Virus record (IMG/VR): IMGVR_UViG_3300036715_004471
Coordinates: 186,001-250,000 of that record
Length of the DNA stretch: 64,000 bases
Reading direction: 5' to 3' (one strand)
How positions within the stretch are numbered: the first letter of the stretch is position 1; each line of letters starts with the position of its first letter. Below the pieces are notes generated by a model. The model was not told the DNA's origin. It saw only the letters and a list, made by a program, of their open reading frames with translations, and ran no database searches. The position numbers and the translations under genes were made by a program. Positions 48,204-64,000 of the stretch are shown piece by piece.

Positions 48204-49217
48204 TTAGGCACCGATTACGACAGACTTACGACCAGCAGCAACACCGCGAGGGTTGACGATGGCGATACCAATTTCTTCGCTTACTACCCAACCAAGCTTC
48301 AATTGCTTTGGCTCGTCGGCTGGAAGAACTTCGATATCTTGTCTAATTGGCATAACACCAACGAACTCAGGATCGGCAGCTCCGTAGATGGTTCCTGGTG
48401 GAACAATCTTGCTTACCATGATGTCAGTACCCCAGATGTGAGCATAAAGACCGGTTTGTAGAACTTCTCTCATTGTGACAGGATCGAAATCACCACCACC
48501 AACGCCTTGTCCACCACCGCTACCCCACTTTAGAATATCAGTGAATTCATTGATATTCATGAAGTACTTAGTTATAACCAAGTCCCAACGATCGATTTGT
48601 TGCTTGATTTCAACAAGGTCTCTCTTCAAAAGACCGGCATCAGCGATGTCAGTTAGGGTGTTTTCAACAGAAGCTGCGGCATCAAGTGCTGCGAAAATGT
48701 TGGCATCTTCTTGAGCCATGATTTCTTGACGAGCCTTCTGTACAGATCTGTCAATTACATTGAATCTACGACGTCTAACTTCGTTAATTCTGACAGTTGG
48801 GTTTGCGTAGATTTCGAAGGTAGGTACTACTACTCTATCACCGAATACTCTGGATTCTGGACCAGTACCGTTAGAGGAAATAACAACGGCTGAAACATCG
48901 ATATCTCTATCATATGTTGGTTGAGCACCTTGAGGTAGAGGATCTACAACTAAGGCTCTACGTGCGATACCATGGTAATCCAAGTTTCTACGAATTGGGT
49001 TTGCCATAGCTTGAGCTAGAGCAATTTTACCGTCTTGAGTCATAATAGCACGAGAGATCAACTCGTCGCGTCTGTCATCACTCAAGGCTACTTGACCGGC
49101 TAATCCCATATTAGCTGGTTGATTCTCTTCCAAAATTGCTGCATACTTAACTAATTGCTGCAACATATCCTTCAAAGAGGATGCGTTCATTGCGCCTTGG
49201 TTGTTGAACATATTCAT
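48204..49217 (-). CDS. Major capsid protein (HK97-like fold)
   Basis: IALAQAMANPIRRNLDY...VVVPTFEIYANPTV...QKARQEIMAQEDANIFAAL...GWVVSEEIGIAIVNP; strong RBS AGGAG; follows a cement gene and is followed by a terminator. Confidence 0.85.
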   Translation of the reverse strand: MNMFNNQGAMNASSLKDMLQQLVKYAAILEENQPANMGLAGQVALSDDRRDELISRAIMTQDGKIALAQAMANPIRRNLDYHGIARRALVVDPLPQGAQPTYDRDIDVSAVVISSNGTGPESRVFGDRVVVPTFEIYANPTVRINEVRRRRFNVIDRSVQKARQEIMAQEDANIFAALDAAASVENTLTDIADAGLLKRDLVEIKQQIDRWDLVITKYFMNINEFTDILKWGSGGGQGVGGGDFDPVTMREVLQTGLYAHIWGTDIMVSKIVPPGTIYGAADPEFVGVMPIRQDIEVLPADEPKQLKLGWVVSEEIGIAIVNPRGVAAGRKSVVIGA

Positions 49218-58023: not shown

Positions 58024-58725
58024 TTATTTCTTCTTAGCAAAAGGGAATGGTTTCTTGGAACCTGAACCCGAAGATTTTGAACTGCTGCTGGAACTAGAAG
58101 AAGATGGCTTCTTTTTTGCTCTAGCATCATTAGAATCTGATTTCTTTCCAGAAGAACTGCTCTTCTTTTTATCATCTTCCTTCTTTTTCTTGGCTCTGGC
58201 ATCATTAGAATCTTTGCTGCTCTTCTTAGGATCGCTCTTCTTCTTAGAATCACTTTTCTTCTTTTCATCCTTCTTCTTGGCTTCAACAACCAAGGAAGCT
58301 AGTTTCAAGCTTAATGAGGATCCCTTTTCAAGACCTGCACGGTCAAGAGCTGCGGAAGCAGTCAAAAGACTGTCAATTGCAACATCTAAAGCAGAGGATT
58401 CTAGATCTTCTGAATCATCGGCACAAGACTTATCTTCTTCTTCCATGTCGGAAGCATTGTGCTCGTCAACAGCACCATCAAAGGCGCTGCTAGAATCTTC
58501 AGAATCGTCCTTCTTCTTTTTTCTAGCATCATTATCATCATATGCGCTATGTGAATCGCTAGAACAGCCATCCTTTACGCCGTGAGTTGGACATATAGTG
58601 TCATTCGCAAAACTTTCGTCAGATGCAAATTTGTATGTACCACCGAACAATGATTGGTGAGCTTGGCTCTTTAATACTGCATCCATTGTTGCAGCAACAA
58701 AATCTGATACGCTTTTATTTCTCAT
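58024..58725 (-). CDS. Low-complexity Lys/Ser/Asp-rich head protein; start revised to ATG 58725
   Basis: AGAGGA RBS; acidic middle, very basic C-terminus with NDAR(A/K)KKK repeats. Confidence 0.65.
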   Translation of the reverse strand: MRNKSVSDFVAATMDAVLKSQAHQSLFGGTYKFASDESFANDTICPTHGVKDGCSSDSHSAYDDNDARKKKKDDSEDSSSAFDGAVDEHNASDMEEEDKSCADDSEDLESSALDVAIDSLLTASAALDRAGLEKGSSLSLKLASLVVEAKKKDEKKKSDSKKKSDPKKSSKDSNDARAKKKKEDDKKKSSSSGKKSDSNDARAKKKPSSSSSSSSSKSSGSGSKKPFPFAKKK

Positions 58726-58750
58726 TTGTTTCCTCTTGGTGTCTAAAACT

Positions 58751-61700
58751 TTAGAACATTCTCTTGGAAGTCTTATTGAATGCTGCGGACAATAATGACC
58801 AGTCATCTTCCACTTGTGCTACGTTATTTTCACCAGAACCAAGTATTCCTACTTGAGGCATACGACCAGCTTCTTTACGCATTGTTGGGCTGTGTTTTGC
58901 AACTACTCTCTTCAAAGTATCGAAACTGTCGTCGTTAAACTTCATGATTTCATCAACTTGTGAGGCGATAGCGATCTTATCGCTGTGGCATAAACCACGG
59001 TCAACCATATCGTAAGCTACTTCGTAAGCTCTTGCAAGCTTGACTTTGTATTTGTTCAACTCATCTTCCATTTGAGCCTTGACATGTTCTTTGACTAATT
59101 CACTGGCGAATTCACCACCACCGTCAACTTGACTGAAGTATTTCTTGTAATAAGAAACAGCATCCTTATCTAGACCTTCTGATACTAGAGCATCAAGATC
59201 AGCTGGGTCAAGTTTACCTTCACTAATTAATCTGTGAATGGCTTCGGCTTCTTTACGAACCTTTGGTGGAGCTTTTGCAAGATCCATCATAGCCTTGTTA
59301 ACTTCTGAAAGGGTTTCTACATAACCCATGTTATCAGATGGCTTGGTATCAAGACCCTTGACTTGACCGTCGGCTAGATTATCGGCTGTATCCATAATGT
59401 CGAAGAATTTAGCTCTAGACATATCTTGAAGTTGTCCGTCATCTTGCTTACCAGTTGGATCAAAAGCGAACTTTCCTAAAGCTTCAGCAGCCAACTTAGC
59501 ACGCATTACGTTGCGCCTTGATCTGTTATCAAAACCAGCAGTTACTTGAACTGTTGTTCCTGGCTTGACATTCAAGTCTTTCAACTCTTCTTTGTTAGCC
59601 ATTAGATCATTGTCATCAGCAAGTGCTGAACCATCAAAAACTTGATCTTGACCGTCAGGACCTTCTTCACCCAAATCTGGGAAACTTTCATCTTCTCCTA
59701 AGCCTTCGCCCAAATCTTCGGAACCGACAGAACCTTCATCCAAATCTTCAAGAGTTGGATCCGCATCACCATCTGTCATGTGAGCGTTATCATCATCGTC
59801 CATCATTTCTTTGACGGAACCTAAATCCCTATTTGTATCTTCAATAAGAGCCATTAAGCTGTCATCGCCACTACCACTCATAGATTCTCCCTCAGCCTCA
59901 GCAAGTGCTTCAAGTTCTGCTTCGATTTCAGCACGTTTGACGATAGCTTTGGTGCCACGAGCATATTTAACGAAGGCAGTCATTAGTCTGAAACCATCTG
60001 CAACGGCAGTCTTGGCTTCGTTTGTTGCATCTTCTAAGATAGAATTAACTAGATCTTCATTGGAGCCAGTAACCGCTCCCTTGTCATATAATCCTACAAT
60101 AGTGCTCAATTCTTCTTCGTGATCGTTAAGCTCAGCAATTACTTCCTTCATGGCGCTAGTCATAGACTCATTCAATTCGCCTCTCAAGGAATTCATTTGC
60201 TCTGTGCTAAAGTCTGAGGCAGTAGCACCCATTTCGGCACCACTAGCACCAATGTCAGCGCCCATTTCAGCTTGTTCACCAGTCAAAGCTCTTACAGCCT
60301 CTACTAGATCAGAGGAAAGGTCTCTAACTTTTTCAGCCAACTCAACTGCGGATTCTTTTGGATCACCAGTTTTACCAGTATCTTCTCCAGTAGGAGCAGC
60401 ACCGGCACTAGGATCAACTGGAGGGGCAGCGGGAACTGCGGCGCCAGCAGAAGGATCAGCAGGAGGTGGGGTTTGAGCATTTTTTACCAAATCACGGACT
60501 CTATCAGCACCGTAAACTTTAACTTTTTCAAGTAATCTTTGACCGAATTCAGCGGTATTAATGGTATCGTACATCATTTCAGAACGACCACCGGAAAGTT
60601 CTCTAACAGAGGCAGACAATAATAGTTTGTCTCCTAAACGAATTTCCCATGCGCTGTTTTCTAGATCTCTGGTTCCATCATTTCTAGAAGCTCTAACGAA
60701 TCTACCATGTAGAGTATTAGCTCTACGTAGCATTTCTTTACGCTTTAATTCATCAGAAGTGTCTGCTGATTCTGGGCTTGGGTGTAAGCCGTCTACTTTG
60801 CCTACATCTGGGAATGGCTTTTGACCATGCATGTGCTTATCATCTTCGTAAGCCATGTGACCCTTATCAGCTGGATACTTTGGTTTACCCGGAGTTGGAG
60901 CGCCCGGATTCTTATCGTCTCCATTTAAGAAGTAAGCCTTTTTCTCTTCCAAAGCTTGCTTGGCAAGGTTTACAATTGCTTGACGACGCAAAGCCTTTTC
61001 TTCTGCATCGGCACGAGCAAGCATTCTCTTACGCTCTAGCTCGGAGACTCCGGAGCTTTCAACACCAGGGTGCATACCATCAACTGGTCCTATATCTGGG
61101 AATGGCTTTTGTCCATGAAGATGCTTGTCCTCTTCATAAGCCATGTGACCTGGATCCTTTGGATATTTAGGTTGACCAGGGGTAGGTTCTTCCGTTCCTT
61201 GGTAGTAACCTTGTTTATTCATTTCTCTTGAAGACATAGTTTCCTCGTGTATATTTGTAGACTTTGCTAACTTATCCAAACTTTGTTTCATATGATTCAA
61301 TTTTGCTTCGATTGCTGCTGTAACTTCACGCAGCTCTTCAATTGAAGTCGTTTCAATTTTAGATGAAGCAAATCTTGCATGTGGTGGAGCTAATCCAGAA
61401 TCAGTATTAGGAGTTTCTATCTCATCATTTATAGAGATAGAACCTGAAGATTGATTAAATGCAAGATCATTAGTATCTTTTTCAGAATTTTCTACAGAAC
61501 TATTTATATCCTGTAATTTTCTGAATGCTGTCTCGATATCTTTTTTGAATTCTTCGAAGGCACTTTGAGATGATAATTTGCCAAATTCCTTAGATTTATT
61601 CTCAAGATAAGTATTCAGAGTATGAGCAGAAGCAATAATGTGTTTAATATTTGCTTTAGGATCGGCGCCATTAACTACAATGGATAATTCAATTGGATTC

Positions 61701-62371
61701 AAATCCACATTGATTTCACCATAACCAGTCTTACGCCTCATGTGTTCACAAAAATCTGCCTCAGCTCTAGCTACAGTAGCACAATCACTACAAATGGCTC
61801 TACCTACAGCGGTACCCATAGATACGCAGTTAGAATAACCAGTAGAAACCTTTCTAGCTAAATCTGGATAATTATGTTTGTCTAAAGCACAAAGAGCAAT
61901 TACTCTTTTCAAATTACGATCATAATAAGTATCAACAATAAAACCTCTTACATGATCGACTGAGCTTGATTTATGATCTATGCAAAGAGGCTTGTGAACC
62001 CATTTTTTATAAGCTTTTACTAATTCTTCTTCCGGAAAAATATCTCCATTAGAATTCTTATATGGCTTGATGCTTGGATCATTAGATGTCCAGCGCCAAG
62101 TGCCACCTCTTTTATCCCAACCAACTTGTACTTGTTCTCCTCTAGCATTTAGCTTGAGAGTACCATCATCGTTGAGAGAAGATGCCTCAGCAGCATGCAT
62201 CATAACAGCTGAGAAATACAAAAAGTCTTCAGCCTTAGGAGCTATCTTCTTAAGATTAGCGGCTGTTTTTCTAAAATTTTCCAATACTTCAGCACTGACT
62301 GCCGGAATACAAGATTCTGTATTCTCAATTCTGCTGATTTCAATAAGTTCACCCAATTTGACAAATGGCAT
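58751..62371 (-). CDS. Prohead protease-scaffold fusion (HK97/assemblin-type protease domain)
   Basis: N-terminal domain with PLCIDH (His), CVSMG (Ser) and IELSIVVNGADP; remainder acidic and coiled-coil, scaffold-like. Confidence 0.75.
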   Translation of the reverse strand: MPFVKLGELIEISRIENTESCIPAVSAEVLENFRKTAANLKKIAPKAEDFLYFSAVMMHAAEASSLNDDGTLKLNARGEQVQVGWDKRGGTWRWTSNDPSIKPYKNSNGDIFPEEELVKAYKKWVHKPLCIDHKSSSVDHVRGFIVDTYYDRNLKRVIALCALDKHNYPDLARKVSTGYSNCVSMGTAVGRAICSDCATVARAEADFCEHMRRKTGYGEINVDLNPIELSIVVNGADPKANIKHIIASAHTLNTYLENKSKEFGKLSSQSAFEEFKKDIETAFRKLQDINSSVENSEKDTNDLAFNQSSGSISINDEIETPNTDSGLAPPHARFASSKIETTSIEELREVTAAIEAKLNHMKQSLDKLAKSTNIHEETMSSREMNKQGYYQGTEEPTPGQPKYPKDPGHMAYEEDKHLHGQKPFPDIGPVDGMHPGVESSGVSELERKRMLARADAEEKALRRQAIVNLAKQALEEKKAYFLNGDDKNPGAPTPGKPKYPADKGHMAYEDDKHMHGQKPFPDVGKVDGLHPSPESADTSDELKRKEMLRRANTLHGRFVRASRNDGTRDLENSAWEIRLGDKLLLSASVRELSGGRSEMMYDTINTAEFGQRLLEKVKVYGADRVRDLVKNAQTPPPADPSAGAAVPAAPPVDPSAGAAPTGEDTGKTGDPKESAVELAEKVRDLSSDLVEAVRALTGEQAEMGADIGASGAEMGATASDFSTEQMNSLRGELNESMTSAMKEVIAELNDHEEELSTIVGLYDKGAVTGSNEDLVNSILEDATNEAKTAVADGFRLMTAFVKYARGTKAIVKRAEIEAELEALAEAEGESMSGSGDDSLMALIEDTNRDLGSVKEMMDDDDNAHMTDGDADPTLEDLDEGSVGSEDLGEGLGEDESFPDLGEEGPDGQDQVFDGSALADDNDLMANKEELKDLNVKPGTTVQVTAGFDNRSRRNVMRAKLAAEALGKFAFDPTGKQDDGQLQDMSRAKFFDIMDTADNLADGQVKGLDTKPSDNMGYVETLSEVNKAMMDLAKAPPKVRKEAEAIHRLISEGKLDPADLDALVSEGLDKDAVSYYKKYFSQVDGGGEFASELVKEHVKAQMEDELNKYKVKLARAYEVAYDMVDRGLCHSDKIAIASQVDEIMKFNDDSFDTLKRVVAKHSPTMRKEAGRMPQVGILGSGENNVAQVEDDWSLLSAAFNKTSKRMF

Positions 62372-62374
62372 TAT

Positions 62375-62536
62375 TTATCTCCCTGATTTCTTCTCTATTG
62401 AAGTATCAGCACTGTCGTCCTCAGACTGCTTAGTTAATTTCTTTGACAAGTCATTAACAGATTGTTTTTGTTGTTCTGTTAATTCTTCTTCATCAAGAAC
62501 AGTCATTATTTTTCCATCACCATGTTTTATAAACAT
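62375..62536 (-). CDS. Small charged hypothetical protein (53 aa); start revised to ATG 62536
   Basis: GGAG RBS; stop 3 nt before the protease ATG. Confidence 0.5.
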   Translation of the reverse strand: MFIKHGDGKIMTVLDEEELTEQQKQSVNDLSKKLTKQSEDDSADTSIEKKSGR

Positions 62537-62640: not shown

Positions 62641-63288
62641 TTAACCTACTTGTGTTCTCTCTTTTATTATTTCGTTTAGTTGATCTTGTCTTTTATTGAA
62701 AAGATCTAGTATCAAAGGCGTTTTCTTCTGCACTCGCATTTGTAAATCGTCACTAACAGTATCAACCCAGCTTTTAGCCAAAATGTTGGATTGAATGTGA
62801 GATTTGATTCTTTCATCAATGATCTCATCTATTTCTTCACACTGTTTTTGAATATTTTCAATTGAAGTTACTACAGTTTTGGCAAATTCTTTTGATTCCA
62901 AATCATTAAAAACATCTGCAAAACTATTAACTTTTACTTCTAAATCATCAATTGAAGATATGAAAGACTTCATTAATTTTAGTGTTTGAGTATCTGAAGA
63001 AAAAACTTGCATTACATTAATACATTTGAATGCCGCAACCTTAAATTCATTAAAATTCTCAATTGATTTGTCTCTAAATCTTCTAATAGCTGCACGTGCC
63101 TTTTGAACATCATCGGGAGACATTTCTGGATTATCTTTGAATGGAGTTTTCATAATATCCAAATGATTGGATGCCATGTCTAACATTTTCAATGAATGAT
63201 TAAAACATAATAAGGCTCGTTCTGCCTGCATCTTTTCAGAATCAGAAACATCATATGTCATTTGAACAGAATAGCCCTTTTTAATCAT
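62641..63288 (-). CDS. Helical hypothetical protein; start revised to ATG 63288
   Basis: ATG overlaps the phosphatase stop (TATGATTAA). Confidence 0.6.
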   Translation of the reverse strand: MIKKGYSVQMTYDVSDSEKMQAERALLCFNHSLKMLDMASNHLDIMKTPFKDNPEMSPDDVQKARAAIRRFRDKSIENFNEFKVAAFKCINVMQVFSSDTQTLKLMKSFISSIDDLEVKVNSFADVFNDLESKEFAKTVVTSIENIQKQCEEIDEIIDERIKSHIQSNILAKSWVDTVSDDLQMRVQKKTPLILDLFNKRQDQLNEIIKERTQVG

Positions 63289-64000
63289 AGAAAAACCCGC
63301 CATAATTCTCAGTTGGACCAAAACCTCTAGCACCAGCATCATTATCAAATGTTCCAACTTGAGGAATTGCGTCTTCTGAAGGATGTTCTTTTATTGGCTT
63401 ATTGGGATGGTAATTTTCTCTGGTAGGAGATTGGTCGTCAATATAATTATATACAGCGTCCATTGGATTTTGTCTAGTTTGACTTAAATATGGAGCAAAT
63501 GATCCTTGATGTCCTTCATCTAAAAAAGAGTCTCTATTATCACTCTTATATTCTCTCTCGTTCGAGACAATATCAGCTTGATTAACATCTTTAATAGGTT
63601 TGCAATTTCTAATAAGCTTTTTATAAGTATTTATTACATGTGGCGGTAACCCAACTCCAAATCCTAATGATTCTGCTTCTTGAATAGCCTTTTCAGAATC
63701 TTTACCCAAAAATTTACACTCTATAAGCGCACAAGCTAATCCCGTACGATCTTTACCATGTAAACAATGGATAAAAGTTGGACCACCTGTTAGAAATAAC
63801 TTATTAAAATCATGACTTAAAAAATCTAATAATGATTTACGAGTATAGTCTATTGGAACCATTACATGAATAATGCCGACCGCTTTACAAATACGATCTA
63901 TCTTGTCTCCCGATTCTTTATCTAGGGAAACAATCTTTTTGATACCAAATTTTTTTAGATTAGCTACATCTTGAGGAGAAGGGGCGCTGCCACGATATAA
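63281..64000 (-). CDS. Cys-based (CX5R) tyrosine/dual-specificity phosphatase, 5-prime partial
   Basis: FIHCLHGKDRTG signature; frame stays open to the window edge, adding LYRGSAPSPQDVANLKKFGIKKIVSL, typical of the DSP N-terminus. Confidence 0.85.
   Translation of the reverse strand, partial: LYRGSAPSPQDVANLKKFGIKKIVSLDKESGDKIDRICKAVGIIHVMVPIDYTRKSLLDFLSHDFNKLFLTGGPTFIHCLHGKDRTGLACALIECKFLGKDSEKAIQEAESLGFGVGLPPHVINTYKKLIRNCKPIKDVNQADIVSNEREYKSDNRDSFLDEGHQGSFAPYLSQTRQNPMDAVYNYIDDQSPTRENYHPNKPIKEHPSEDAIPQVGTFDNDAGARGFGPTENYGGFFYD

What the first reader, a model, noticed from the sequence alone, without database searches (positions are those of the whole stretch)
63281..64000. CX5R phosphatase translationally coupled into the head-assembly operon
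An intact HCLHGKDRTG active site is followed by a roughly 95-aa low-complexity tail after DVNQAD (a possible Ala cleavage site), and the stop overlaps the next start. A phosphatase here may be packaged and injected to counter host kinase-based defence, or may control assembly. GKDRTG-type enzymes also act on phosphoinositides and inositol pyrophosphates, so the substrate is open.
Basis: partly seen in the sequence, partly recalled or inferred. Interest (0 to 1): 0.6.

Follow-up and report, generated by a model that had tools for sequence, protein, structure and literature searches.

The report
Megaphage head-module phosphatase with conserved tail
A giant environmental phage encodes, between its portal and head-protease genes, a small cysteine phosphatase fused to a very conserved, predicted-disordered 105-residue tail. 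The tail, not the enzyme, is the part no related phage has lost, so the protein is probably a head-associated carrier with an optional enzyme cargo.

Summary
A 250-aa minus-strand gene (window 63281 to 33 nt past the window end) encodes an atypical dual-specificity (CX5R) phosphatase with an intact HCLHGKDRTG loop, and its start and stop both overlap the neighbouring genes.

It lies in the head module of a 446.5-kb phage distantly related to Bacillus phage G: terminase, portal, four genes, phosphatase, two genes, prohead protease/scaffold, and further on the major capsid protein. This order is the same in all 80 related loci fetched.

The "low-complexity tail" is mis-described. It has normal complexity, is acidic and is predicted disordered, yet it is more conserved than the catalytic domain. 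It occurs almost nowhere else among 1.84 billion representative proteins.

Some natural relatives have lost the phosphatase domain (three lineages) or its catalytic Cys/Arg (two lineages). All of them keep the tail, and in some it is fused to the upstream or downstream neighbour.

Best reading (confidence about 0.4): the tail is a head-assembly or encapsidation module, and the phosphatase is a dispensable cargo that acts in the host. Packaging, substrate and binding partner are untested. The one complex prediction gave no verdict.

This is a new variant of a known enzyme kind and is of moderate interest.

The parts
63281..64000 (-). Phosphatase-plus-tail gene. The window holds residues 12-250. 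The true ATG lies 33 nt past the window end, at genome position C1:250033.
63599..64000 (-). Catalytic atypical-DSP domain (residues 1-145; residues 12-145 lie in the window). AlphaFold2 pLDDT is about 90. Closest folds are TpbA, Siw14 and AtPFA-DSP1.
63740..63769 (-). P-loop HCLHGKDRTG, with Cys90 as nucleophile and Arg96. H, C, G, K, D, R, T and G are invariant in 120 relatives.
63848..63850 (-). Asp62 codon, at the position of the general acid (28 residues before Cys90). It is present here but variable in the family: D 68, E 24, N 18, G 5, others 2, out of 120.
63284..63598 (-). Conserved tail, residues 146-250. It is acidic (pI 4.5, net charge -10), rich in aromatic residues and predicted disordered (pLDDT under 52). 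It has three conserved blocks separated by one variable linker (residues 209-222).
63281..63288 (-). ATGATTAA: the phosphatase stop TAA overlaps the start of the next gene.
62641..63288 (-). Downstream 215-aa helical protein of unknown function ('u215'). It is always next to the tail and is fused to it in three lineages.
62375..62536 (-). Small conserved 53-aa gene between u215 and the protease gene.
58751..62371 (-). 1206-aa prohead protease fused to a long scaffold-like region. The protease domain is about residues 106-216 and is 34% identical to phage G gp19.
48204..49217 (-). Major capsid protein, 337 aa (phrog_2522; 54% identical to Bacillus phage G gp27).

Best explanation
The gene encodes a two-part protein.

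Residues 1-145 are a minimal cysteine-dependent atypical dual-specificity phosphatase. Cys90 is the nucleophile, Arg96 binds phosphate, and Asp62 is the candidate general acid.

Residues 146-250 are an acidic, intrinsically disordered but strongly conserved module that is specific to this phage clade.

I propose that the tail is the anchoring part. It would tie the protein into a head-assembly complex, probably with the products of the two flanking genes (u246 and u215), inside the prohead. The phosphatase domain would be an accessory cargo carried into the capsid and released into the next host with the DNA, where it would hydrolyse a host phospho-substrate.

Shown:
- the enzyme fold and an intact active site;
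- the position in the head module and the coupling to both neighbours;
- conservation of the locus;
- a tail more conserved than the enzyme;
- natural fusions to both neighbours;
- repeated loss of the enzyme with the tail kept.

Inferred and untested:
- binding of the tail to head components;
- encapsidation and ejection;
- the substrate.

The general-acid position is variable. That hints at a substrate with a good leaving group, such as a phosphoanhydride, rather than only phosphotyrosine.
For: (1) Enzyme:
- Pfam Y_phosphatase3 scores above its cut-off; Y_phosphatase2, PTP-SAK and Tc-R-P score just below.
- PDB sequence hits: TpbA at E 1e-8 with the single protein and 8e-10 with the family profile, and Siw14 at 4e-8.
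- The AlphaFold2 model has pLDDT about 90 over residues 1-145.
- Foldseek finds TpbA, Siw14, AtPFA-DSP1, SsoPTP and VHZ.
- The P-loop is invariant in 120 relatives.
- dN/dS is about 0.1-0.18.

(2) Context:
- The gene order is terminase, portal, u434, glucosaminidase, u130, u246, phosphatase, u215, u53, prohead protease/scaffold and, further on, the capsid protein.
- The order is the same in 80 of 80 IMG/VR loci and in a 462-kb GenBank genome.
- The upstream ATGA overlap is present in 38 of 67 distinct loci.
- No promoter or terminator signal above chance lies inside the block.

(3) Tail:
- It is more conserved than the enzyme.
- It is predicted disordered both in this protein and in a natural u246-tail fusion.
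- It is found in only 50 representative clusters of 1.84 billion, all from this locus type.
- It has no second copy in the genome.

(4) Modularity:
- u246+phosphatase+tail fusions: P0135, P0141, P0151.
- Phosphatase+tail+u215 fusions: P0136, P0163, P0166.
- u246+tail proteins with no phosphatase domain: P0138 (9 contigs; the three shown come from three samples), P0140, P0157.
- Dead active sites: P0126 (Cys and Arg lost, 8 contigs) and P0136 (Arg to Cys).
- All of these sit at the same head-module slot.
- On a portal tree, one phosphatase-less lineage (L090) is nested among phosphatase-bearing phages, sister to L065 with SH-aLRT 95. That is a secondary loss.

(5) Precedent:
- Baculovirus BmNPV PTP is a virion structural protein whose activity is dispensable for the phenotype studied (PMC3320614).
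- From my own knowledge, not checked here: vaccinia VH1 phosphatase is encapsidated; T4 Alt and the T4 internal proteins are loaded by a targeting sequence; the C-terminal tail of the HK97 protease and encapsulin cargo peptides target proteins to the inside of HK97-fold shells.
Against: - There are no proteomic or expression data. No RNA run holds the locus.
- Head modules of this lineage can hold non-structural late genes. Phage G has its endolysin and holin between protease and capsid genes. Position alone therefore does not prove a virion protein, and the neighbouring glucosaminidase may simply be the endolysin.
- The tail shows no similarity to any other protein of the genome, so it is not a shared targeting signal.
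- The tail-u215 complex prediction gave no verdict, and the tail does not pack on u246 in the model of a natural fusion.
- u246, u215 and u434 have no recognisable fold or family. Their role in the head is itself inferred from position.
- The tail search was seeded with the tail, so phosphatase-only variants would not have been seen.
Confidence: 0.4

Rival explanations
1. A late-expressed cytoplasmic enzyme that is never packaged. It is co-transcribed with head genes only because the late operon is long. It acts in the infected cell, for example on host phosphoproteins, polyphosphate or nucleotide alarmones. The tail would be a regulatory or localising region that binds u246 and u215.
For: - Phage G carries lysis genes inside its head module, so non-structural genes do sit in such modules.
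- The enzyme is dispensable in some lineages, as expected for an accessory host-manipulation gene.
- Nothing here shows encapsidation.
Against: - This reading does not explain why the tail outlives the enzyme and is the most conserved part.
- It does not explain why the tail is fused to both conserved neighbours that lie directly upstream of the prohead protease gene.
- If the tail only regulated the enzyme, it should be lost together with it.
Confidence: 0.27
2. An assembly regulator. The phosphatase would dephosphorylate phage head proteins (scaffold, portal or capsid protein) to time prohead assembly or maturation, and the tail would dock it on its substrate.
For: - It lies in the head module next to the protease/scaffold gene and is translationally coupled.
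- From my own knowledge: vaccinia VH1 also acts on viral structural proteins.
Against: - Catalytic residues or the whole domain are lost in at least five lineage representatives that keep an otherwise intact head module.
- One of these losses is clearly secondary.
- No phage kinase gene lies nearby.
- Phage G, with a related portal, protease and capsid protein, has no such gene.
Confidence: 0.13
3. Essentially a structural protein. The whole polypeptide would be a minor head or assembly component, and the phosphatase fold would be retained as a scaffold whose enzymatic activity is irrelevant, as in the baculovirus BmNPV PTP case.
For: - One lineage keeps a pseudo-phosphatase domain with a destroyed P-loop (P0126).
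- The tail is always kept.
- Precedent: PMC3320614.
Against: - The P-loop is invariant in 120 of 120 close relatives and intact in 34 of 39 full-length deep representatives.
- The catalytic domain is under purifying selection.
- That pattern is hard to explain without selection on catalysis in most lineages.
Confidence: 0.12

Closest known systems
TpbA of Pseudomonas aeruginosa (PDB 2M3V, 4R0S), a periplasmic dual-specificity phosphatase
   Same: It is the best sequence and fold match (E 1e-8 to 8e-10; Foldseek E 2e-8). It shares the N-terminal YR(S/G)xxP motif, the HCxHGxxRTG loop and a conserved GFG after the fifth helix.
   Different: Identity is only about 23%. The phage protein has no signal peptide, since it starts directly with the first strand. 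It carries the 105-residue tail, is phage-encoded and sits in a head module.
Siw14 / plant-fungal atypical DSPs (PFA-DSP, Pfam PF03162), inositol-pyrophosphate phosphatases
   Same: The fold and the N-terminal motif are shared (profile E 4e-8). A UniProt clade member is auto-named 'SIW14-like'. As in these enzymes, the general-acid position is not strictly conserved.
   Different: The P-loop is GKDRTG, not GKHR(T/V)G. This protein scores 26.0 bits against the cut-off of 27. Bacteria are not known to make inositol pyrophosphates (my own knowledge), so the substrate must differ.
MptpB-type phosphatases (Pfam PF13350, Y_phosphatase3)
   Same: It has the same P-loop signature, HCxAGKDRTG-like. This is the only Pfam family above its cut-off (31.9 bits against 22.2).
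   Different: The match covers only 36 residues around the P-loop (profile positions 125-159 of 240). The larger domain, with its lid, is absent.
Virion-associated phosphatases of eukaryotic DNA viruses (baculovirus PTP; vaccinia VH1)
   Same: Each is a small DSP-fold enzyme of a large dsDNA virus tied to the particle. For BmNPV PTP the structural role does not need catalysis (PMC3320614). Baculovirus and poxvirus DSPs appear among the fold matches.
   Different: These are independent acquisitions in eukaryotic viruses. Packaging of the phage protein is not shown. Nothing like the tail is known in them. That VH1 is encapsidated is my own knowledge, not checked here.
Phage head cargo systems (T4 internal proteins and Alt with a capsid-targeting sequence; MuF-domain polymorphic toxins next to portal genes; HK97 protease C-terminal tail; encapsulin cargo-loading peptides)
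   Same: The logic is the same: an enzyme joined to a separate module that places it inside an HK97-fold shell, encoded beside portal and protease genes.
   Different: No MuF domain is present, and the tail shows no similarity to any described targeting sequence. At 105 residues with three conserved blocks, the tail is far longer than known targeting peptides. The comparison rests on my own knowledge of those systems.

Membership tests
Cysteine-dependent PTP/DSP superfamily | P-loop HCX5R(S/T) with a nucleophilic Cys and a phosphate-binding Arg | tested here: met
   HCLHGKDRTG at residues 89-98. It is invariant in 120 relatives.
Cysteine-dependent PTP/DSP superfamily | DSP alpha/beta fold, with the P-loop between a central strand and a helix | tested here: met
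   AlphaFold2 pLDDT is about 90 over residues 1-145. More than 200 PDB phosphatase chains match at E<=1e-3.
Cysteine-dependent PTP/DSP superfamily | General-acid Asp on the loop about 30 residues before the Cys | tested here: inconclusive
   Asp62 is present here, 28 residues before Cys90. The column reads D 68, E 24, N 18, G 5 of 120, and this is the most variable stretch of the domain.
Cysteine-dependent PTP/DSP superfamily | Phosphatase activity | not testable with these tools
   Needs a recombinant enzyme assay.
PFA-DSP / Siw14 (PF03162) | Score above the Pfam gathering cut-off | tested here: inconclusive
   This protein scores 26.0 bits against 27. More distant clade members score 50-51 bits.
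PFA-DSP / Siw14 (PF03162) | Basic P-loop GKHR(T/V)G that binds inositol pyrophosphate | tested here: not met
   The loop is GKDRTG, with Asp at the position where Siw14 has His in the alignment.
Y_phosphatase3 / MptpB-like (PF13350) | Full-length match to the roughly 240-position domain | tested here: not met
   Only profile positions 125-159 are matched. MptpB matches over the P-loop only.
TpbA-like periplasmic DSP | Signal peptide and periplasmic location | tested here: not met
   The first strand starts at about residue 6, so there is no room for a signal peptide (sequence).
Virion-packaged or ejected phage protein | Presence in purified particles | not testable with these tools
   There is no cultured member and no proteome. 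No RNA runs hold the locus.
Virion-packaged or ejected phage protein | Gene located among head-assembly genes and conserved there | tested here: met
   It lies between portal and prohead protease in 80 of 80 loci.
MuF-type polymorphic toxin / polyvalent protein | MuF (SPP1 gp7-like) anchoring domain in the same polypeptide | tested here: not met
   No such domain was found by Pfam or PHROGs. PTP-SAK and Tc-R-P hits are below their cut-offs.

The most novel reading that the evidence does not exclude
A large clade of uncultured megaphages (about 380-495 kb) uses a conserved, disordered, roughly 100-residue acidic module as a handle that loads proteins into the capsid. With it, they deliver a cysteine phosphatase into the host together with the DNA. 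This would be the first virion-delivered protein or phosphoanhydride phosphatase of a bacteriophage and a new kind of capsid-targeting sequence, a bacterial-virus counterpart of poxvirus VH1.
Probability: 0.3. Interest if true: 0.72.

Novelty: new variant of a known kind. Interest (0 to 1): 0.5.

Why it matters
Cysteine phosphatases are rare in phages. In the viral structure library, the only phage match among the 50 matches listed was a member of this same clade. None is known to travel in a phage particle.

Here the enzyme is a near-universal gene of the head module in a widespread group of environmental megaphages. Its partner module, a highly conserved disordered tail, has outlived the enzyme wherever the enzyme was lost.

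If the tail is an encapsidation handle, it would be a simple, transferable tag for loading cargo into very large HK97-type capsids. The phosphatase would then be a new class of injected host-takeover or counter-defence enzyme.

If it is not packaged, the finding is still a clean example of a conserved intrinsically disordered region under stronger constraint than the enzyme it is attached to.

Tried and rejected
- Complex prediction of the tail (residues 146-250) with u215 gave ipSAE 0.01, which is no verdict. It is not evidence either way.
- I folded a natural u246-tail fusion (P0138) to see whether the tail packs on u246. The tail stayed below pLDDT 50.
- Fold searches for u246 gave only generic helical bundles: Foldseek E above 0.1 and VIA-align Z at or below 9.7.
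- ESM Atlas look-ups of u215 and u246 gave no lead.
- Profile searches of u434 and u215 against PDB sequences found nothing.
- hhalign against phage G gp15 and gp17 found no relation.
- A tail HMM against all six frames of the phage's own genome found no second copy, so the tail is not a shared signal.
- Phage collections: megablast found no match. tblastn hit only 'Acinetobacter phage MD-2021a', whose locus is bacterial chromosome with secA and trpA, so it is not a phage precedent.
- The kinase search of the genome found only a sub-threshold kinase-like ORF at the record end. No PPK2 was found.
- Literature searches for packaged phage phosphatases found nothing relevant. The Rhodanese-phosphatase superfamily paper was not held.
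- The ESM Atlas fold library was unavailable.
- I considered deriving a protease cleavage motif from the capsid protein's N-terminal extension and dropped the idea.
- Read laying was not used. Only DNA contigs hold the locus and no RNA run does.

Full report
**What is there.** The finding lies on the minus strand. The open frame runs off the window. The window is bases 186001-250000 of a 446,541-bp virus record. In that record the gene is 250 codons long and starts 33 nt beyond the window end. Its ATG overlaps the TGA of the upstream 246-aa gene (ATGA). An AAGGA lies 8 nt upstream of that ATG. Its TAA (window 63281-63283) sits inside ATGATTAA, which carries the ATG of the next gene. The N-terminus of that gene, MIKKxYSVQM(T/S)Y, is conserved in relatives, so the start is real. 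The loop HCLHGKDRTG is residues 89-98 (window 63740-63769, read).

**The enzyme.** Pfam gives Y_phosphatase3 above its cut-off, although that match covers only the P-loop region. Y_phosphatase2, Tc-R-P, PTP-SAK and DSPc fall just below their cut-offs. Among solved structures, the nearest by sequence are P. aeruginosa TpbA (E 1e-8 with the single protein, 8e-10 with a family profile) and yeast Siw14 (4e-8). Arabidopsis PFA-DSP1, LSF2 and MptpB are weaker. An AlphaFold2 model built on 120 relatives has pLDDT about 90 for residues 1-145, with the strand/helix order of a minimal DSP. Foldseek returns TpbA, Siw14, PFA-DSP1, a DUF442 phosphatase, SsoPTP, VHZ, Cdc14 and a baculovirus PTP-2.

In 120 relatives H89, C90, G93, K94, D95, R96, T97 and G98 never vary. 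The residue at the general-acid position, Asp62, is present here. It sits, however, in the most variable stretch of the domain: D 68, E 24, N 18, G 5 of 120. Siw14 also has no acid at the aligned place. From what is known of cysteine phosphatases that hydrolyse phosphoanhydrides (Siw14/PFA-DSPs, RNA triphosphatases; my own knowledge), a dispensable general acid points to a substrate with a good leaving group. This is an inference, not a result. There is no signal peptide.

**The tail.** After helix 131-142 the model falls to pLDDT 40-52 through to the C-terminus. The stretch is not low-complexity. It uses 18 residue types and has compositional entropy of 4.01 bits, against 4.05 for the domain. 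It is acidic (pI 4.5, net charge -10, against pI 9.4 for the domain), hydrophilic and rich in aromatic residues.

It is also the best conserved part of the protein. Three blocks are nearly invariant across relatives and are separated by one variable linker (residues 209-222):
- ADIVSNEREY..DNRDSFLDE..QGSFAPYL
- TRQNPMDAVYN...DQSPTRENY
- VP.VG.F(D/N)NDAG.RGFGPTEN.GGF(F/I)YD

. Mean pairwise identity is 71% for the tail and 63% for the domain, and the tail is higher in 88% of 7140 pairs. For the closest pairs dN/dS is about 0.08-0.18 in both parts.

A profile of the tail finds no second copy in any frame of the genome. An exhaustive search of 1.84 billion representative proteins with the tail alone finds only 50 clusters. 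I used the costly search because the claim rests on absence elsewhere. Nearly all of the hits have the same roughly 250-aa architecture or are fragments of it.

**The surroundings.** All genes from C1:217 kb to 285 kb lie on the minus strand, and coding density under the standard code is 88%. The order in the direction of transcription is:
- large terminase (626 aa);
- portal (615 aa);
- a 434-aa protein of unknown function (u434);
- a 325-aa glucosaminidase;
- u130;
- u246;
- the phosphatase;
- u215;
- u53;
- a 1206-aa protein whose residues 106-216 match head-maturation proteases;
- a run of proteins of unknown function;
- a 337-aa major capsid protein

. No promoter-like or terminator-like signal exceeds chance within the 4 kb around the gene.

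The capsid protein is 54% identical to gp27 of Bacillus phage G. The portal and the protease domain are 34% identical to G's gp14 and gp19. Phage G itself has no homologue of the phosphatase or of u434, u246 or u215. The sequence occurs in microbial-mat, aquatic and sediment metagenomes. No RNA run holds it.

**Conservation at the locus.** The word search found 557 relatives. The best 120 are 249-266 aa long, 62-85% identical over the whole length, and many lie on contigs of 380-495 kb. In IMG/VR, 152 loci encode a relative. All 80 that were fetched (44-100% identity) show the same gene order wherever the contig reaches far enough, and so does a 462-kb GenBank genome. The phosphatase diverges at about the same rate as its structural neighbours. 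The upstream 4-nt overlap is seen in 38 of 67 distinct loci, and a 1-nt overlap or a 1-nt gap in 20 more. The distance to u215 ranges from -8 to a few tens of nt.

**The informative exceptions.** The tail search turned up three kinds of natural variant:
- u246 fused to phosphatase plus tail: P0135, P0141, P0151.
- Phosphatase plus tail fused to u215: P0136, P0163, P0166, and fragment P0170.
- u246, or part of it, fused directly to the tail with no phosphatase domain: P0138, P0140, P0157.

. Two further lineages keep the domain but not the chemistry. In P0126 the loop reads HGQKDEDISK, so both Cys and Arg are gone. In P0136 the Arg is replaced by Cys.

Each of these variants sits at the same slot between portal and protease. 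P0138 is on 9 contigs, and the three shown come from three samples. P0126 is on 8 contigs. They are therefore not assembly accidents.

I built a portal tree (a quick IQ-TREE search, with phage G as a very long outgroup branch, so the root is uncertain). In it, the phosphatase-less L090 is nested within the crown group, sister to a phosphatase-bearing phage with SH-aLRT 95. That is a secondary loss. The other exceptions lie on deep or long branches, next to lineages with an intact enzyme.

Of 39 full-length deep representatives, 34 keep CX5R. One caveat applies: the search was seeded with the tail, so it cannot reveal phosphatase-only variants.

**What this means.** The fusions tie u246, the tail and u215 together functionally. 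The losses show that catalysis is not needed to build a particle. Retention of the tail in every case shows that it has a function of its own.

The simplest model is a head-associated anchor (the tail, working with u246 and u215) that carries an optional enzyme. By analogy with the genes that lie between portal and protease in other phages (T4 gp67/gp68, Mu gpF, SPP1 gp7; my own knowledge), I take the complex to be a prohead-internal component and the phosphatase to be delivered to the next host.

This last step is inference. It is weakened by the fact that phage G keeps its endolysin and holin inside its head module. Non-structural genes can therefore live there, and the adjacent glucosaminidase need not be an ejected enzyme. 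One relative has an SLT lysozyme at that slot instead. I could not find a partner for the tail: the one complex prediction gave no verdict, and the tail does not dock on u246 in a modelled natural fusion.

**Comparison with what is known.** As an enzyme it is an atypical DSP that lies between the TpbA and PFA-DSP/Siw14 types and carries an MptpB-like GKDRTG loop. It fails a defining test for each of those three families: no signal peptide, Asp instead of His in the loop, and only a partial PF13350 match.

As a viral gene, its nearest functional parallels are the particle-associated phosphatases of baculoviruses and poxviruses. For BmNPV PTP, the structural role does not require activity (PMC3320614). 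A UniProt entry of the clade is auto-annotated 'SIW14-like'. No study of the family was found.

**Verdict.** This is a real, intact, strongly conserved head-module phosphatase with a novel conserved disordered C-terminal module.

Noticed in passing
window 58751-62371 (-); repeats at 60780-60898 and 61068-61186: The 1206-aa prohead protease/scaffold gene contains an internal duplication: 119 nt at 76% identity, 288 nt apart. It encodes two copies of a P/G/H-rich segment (..PKYP.D.GHMAYE.DKH.HGQKPFPD.G.VDG.HP..). The rest of the protein is long, acidic and predicted helical.
   Followed up: partly
window 58024-58806 (-): The 260-aa ORF just after the protease/scaffold gene is extremely rich in K, S and D, with true low-complexity runs of KKK, SSSS and 'NDARAKKK' repeats. 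Its listed start overlaps the end of the protease gene by 56 nt. It may be an internal DNA-binding head protein. No family hit was found.
   Followed up: no
L002:1170-2144 (genome C1:251167-252144) and L091:6571-7380: The peptidoglycan-hydrolase slot between portal and phosphatase holds a glucosaminidase (PF01832) in this phage and most relatives, but an SLT/lysozyme in one relative (L091). It is empty in the P0138 lineage, which has an SLT gene upstream of the terminase. This is non-orthologous replacement at a fixed position.
   Followed up: partly
L003:1580-4501; L086:1955-4078; L090:2141-5128; L092:276-4352: Terminase and portal genes of several relatives are enlarged by inteins or LAGLIDADG homing endonucleases (portal up to 1358 aa, terminase up to 973 aa). 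This genome's copies (626 and 615 aa) are intein-free.
   Followed up: no
L093:1480-2139 (genome C1:445882-446541, minus strand): A 220-aa ORF that runs to the very end of the record has a sub-threshold match to the protein-kinase catalytic-loop region (Pkinase 20.5 bits, and Kdo/APH-like). It is the only kinase-like sequence in the genome and lies about 196 kb from the phosphatase.
   Followed up: partly
whole record G000: IMG/VR labels the 446.5-kb record a 'provirus', but the same protein lies on a 465.8-kb contig. The record shows one long co-directional structural block and 88% coding density. The label may come from automatic trimming rather than from a real integrated state.
   Followed up: no
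L094 (CAKLQH020000002.1, 'Acinetobacter phage MD-2021a'): The only hit in the phage collection lies on a record whose neighbourhood is plainly bacterial chromosome (secA, trpA, accD, folC, ahpC). The record appears to be mislabelled as a phage.
   Followed up: yes
window 48204-49217 (-): The major capsid protein has about 45 extra N-terminal residues compared with phage G gp27, whose annotated start aligns to residue 45. This may be a propeptide removed by the prohead protease.
   Followed up: no
L002:2149-3450 (genome C1:252146-253450): The 434-aa protein that follows the portal has a conserved N-terminal part of about 250 aa, a proline-rich linker of very variable length, and a conserved C-terminal part of about 60 aa. 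No family or structure match was found.
   Followed up: partly
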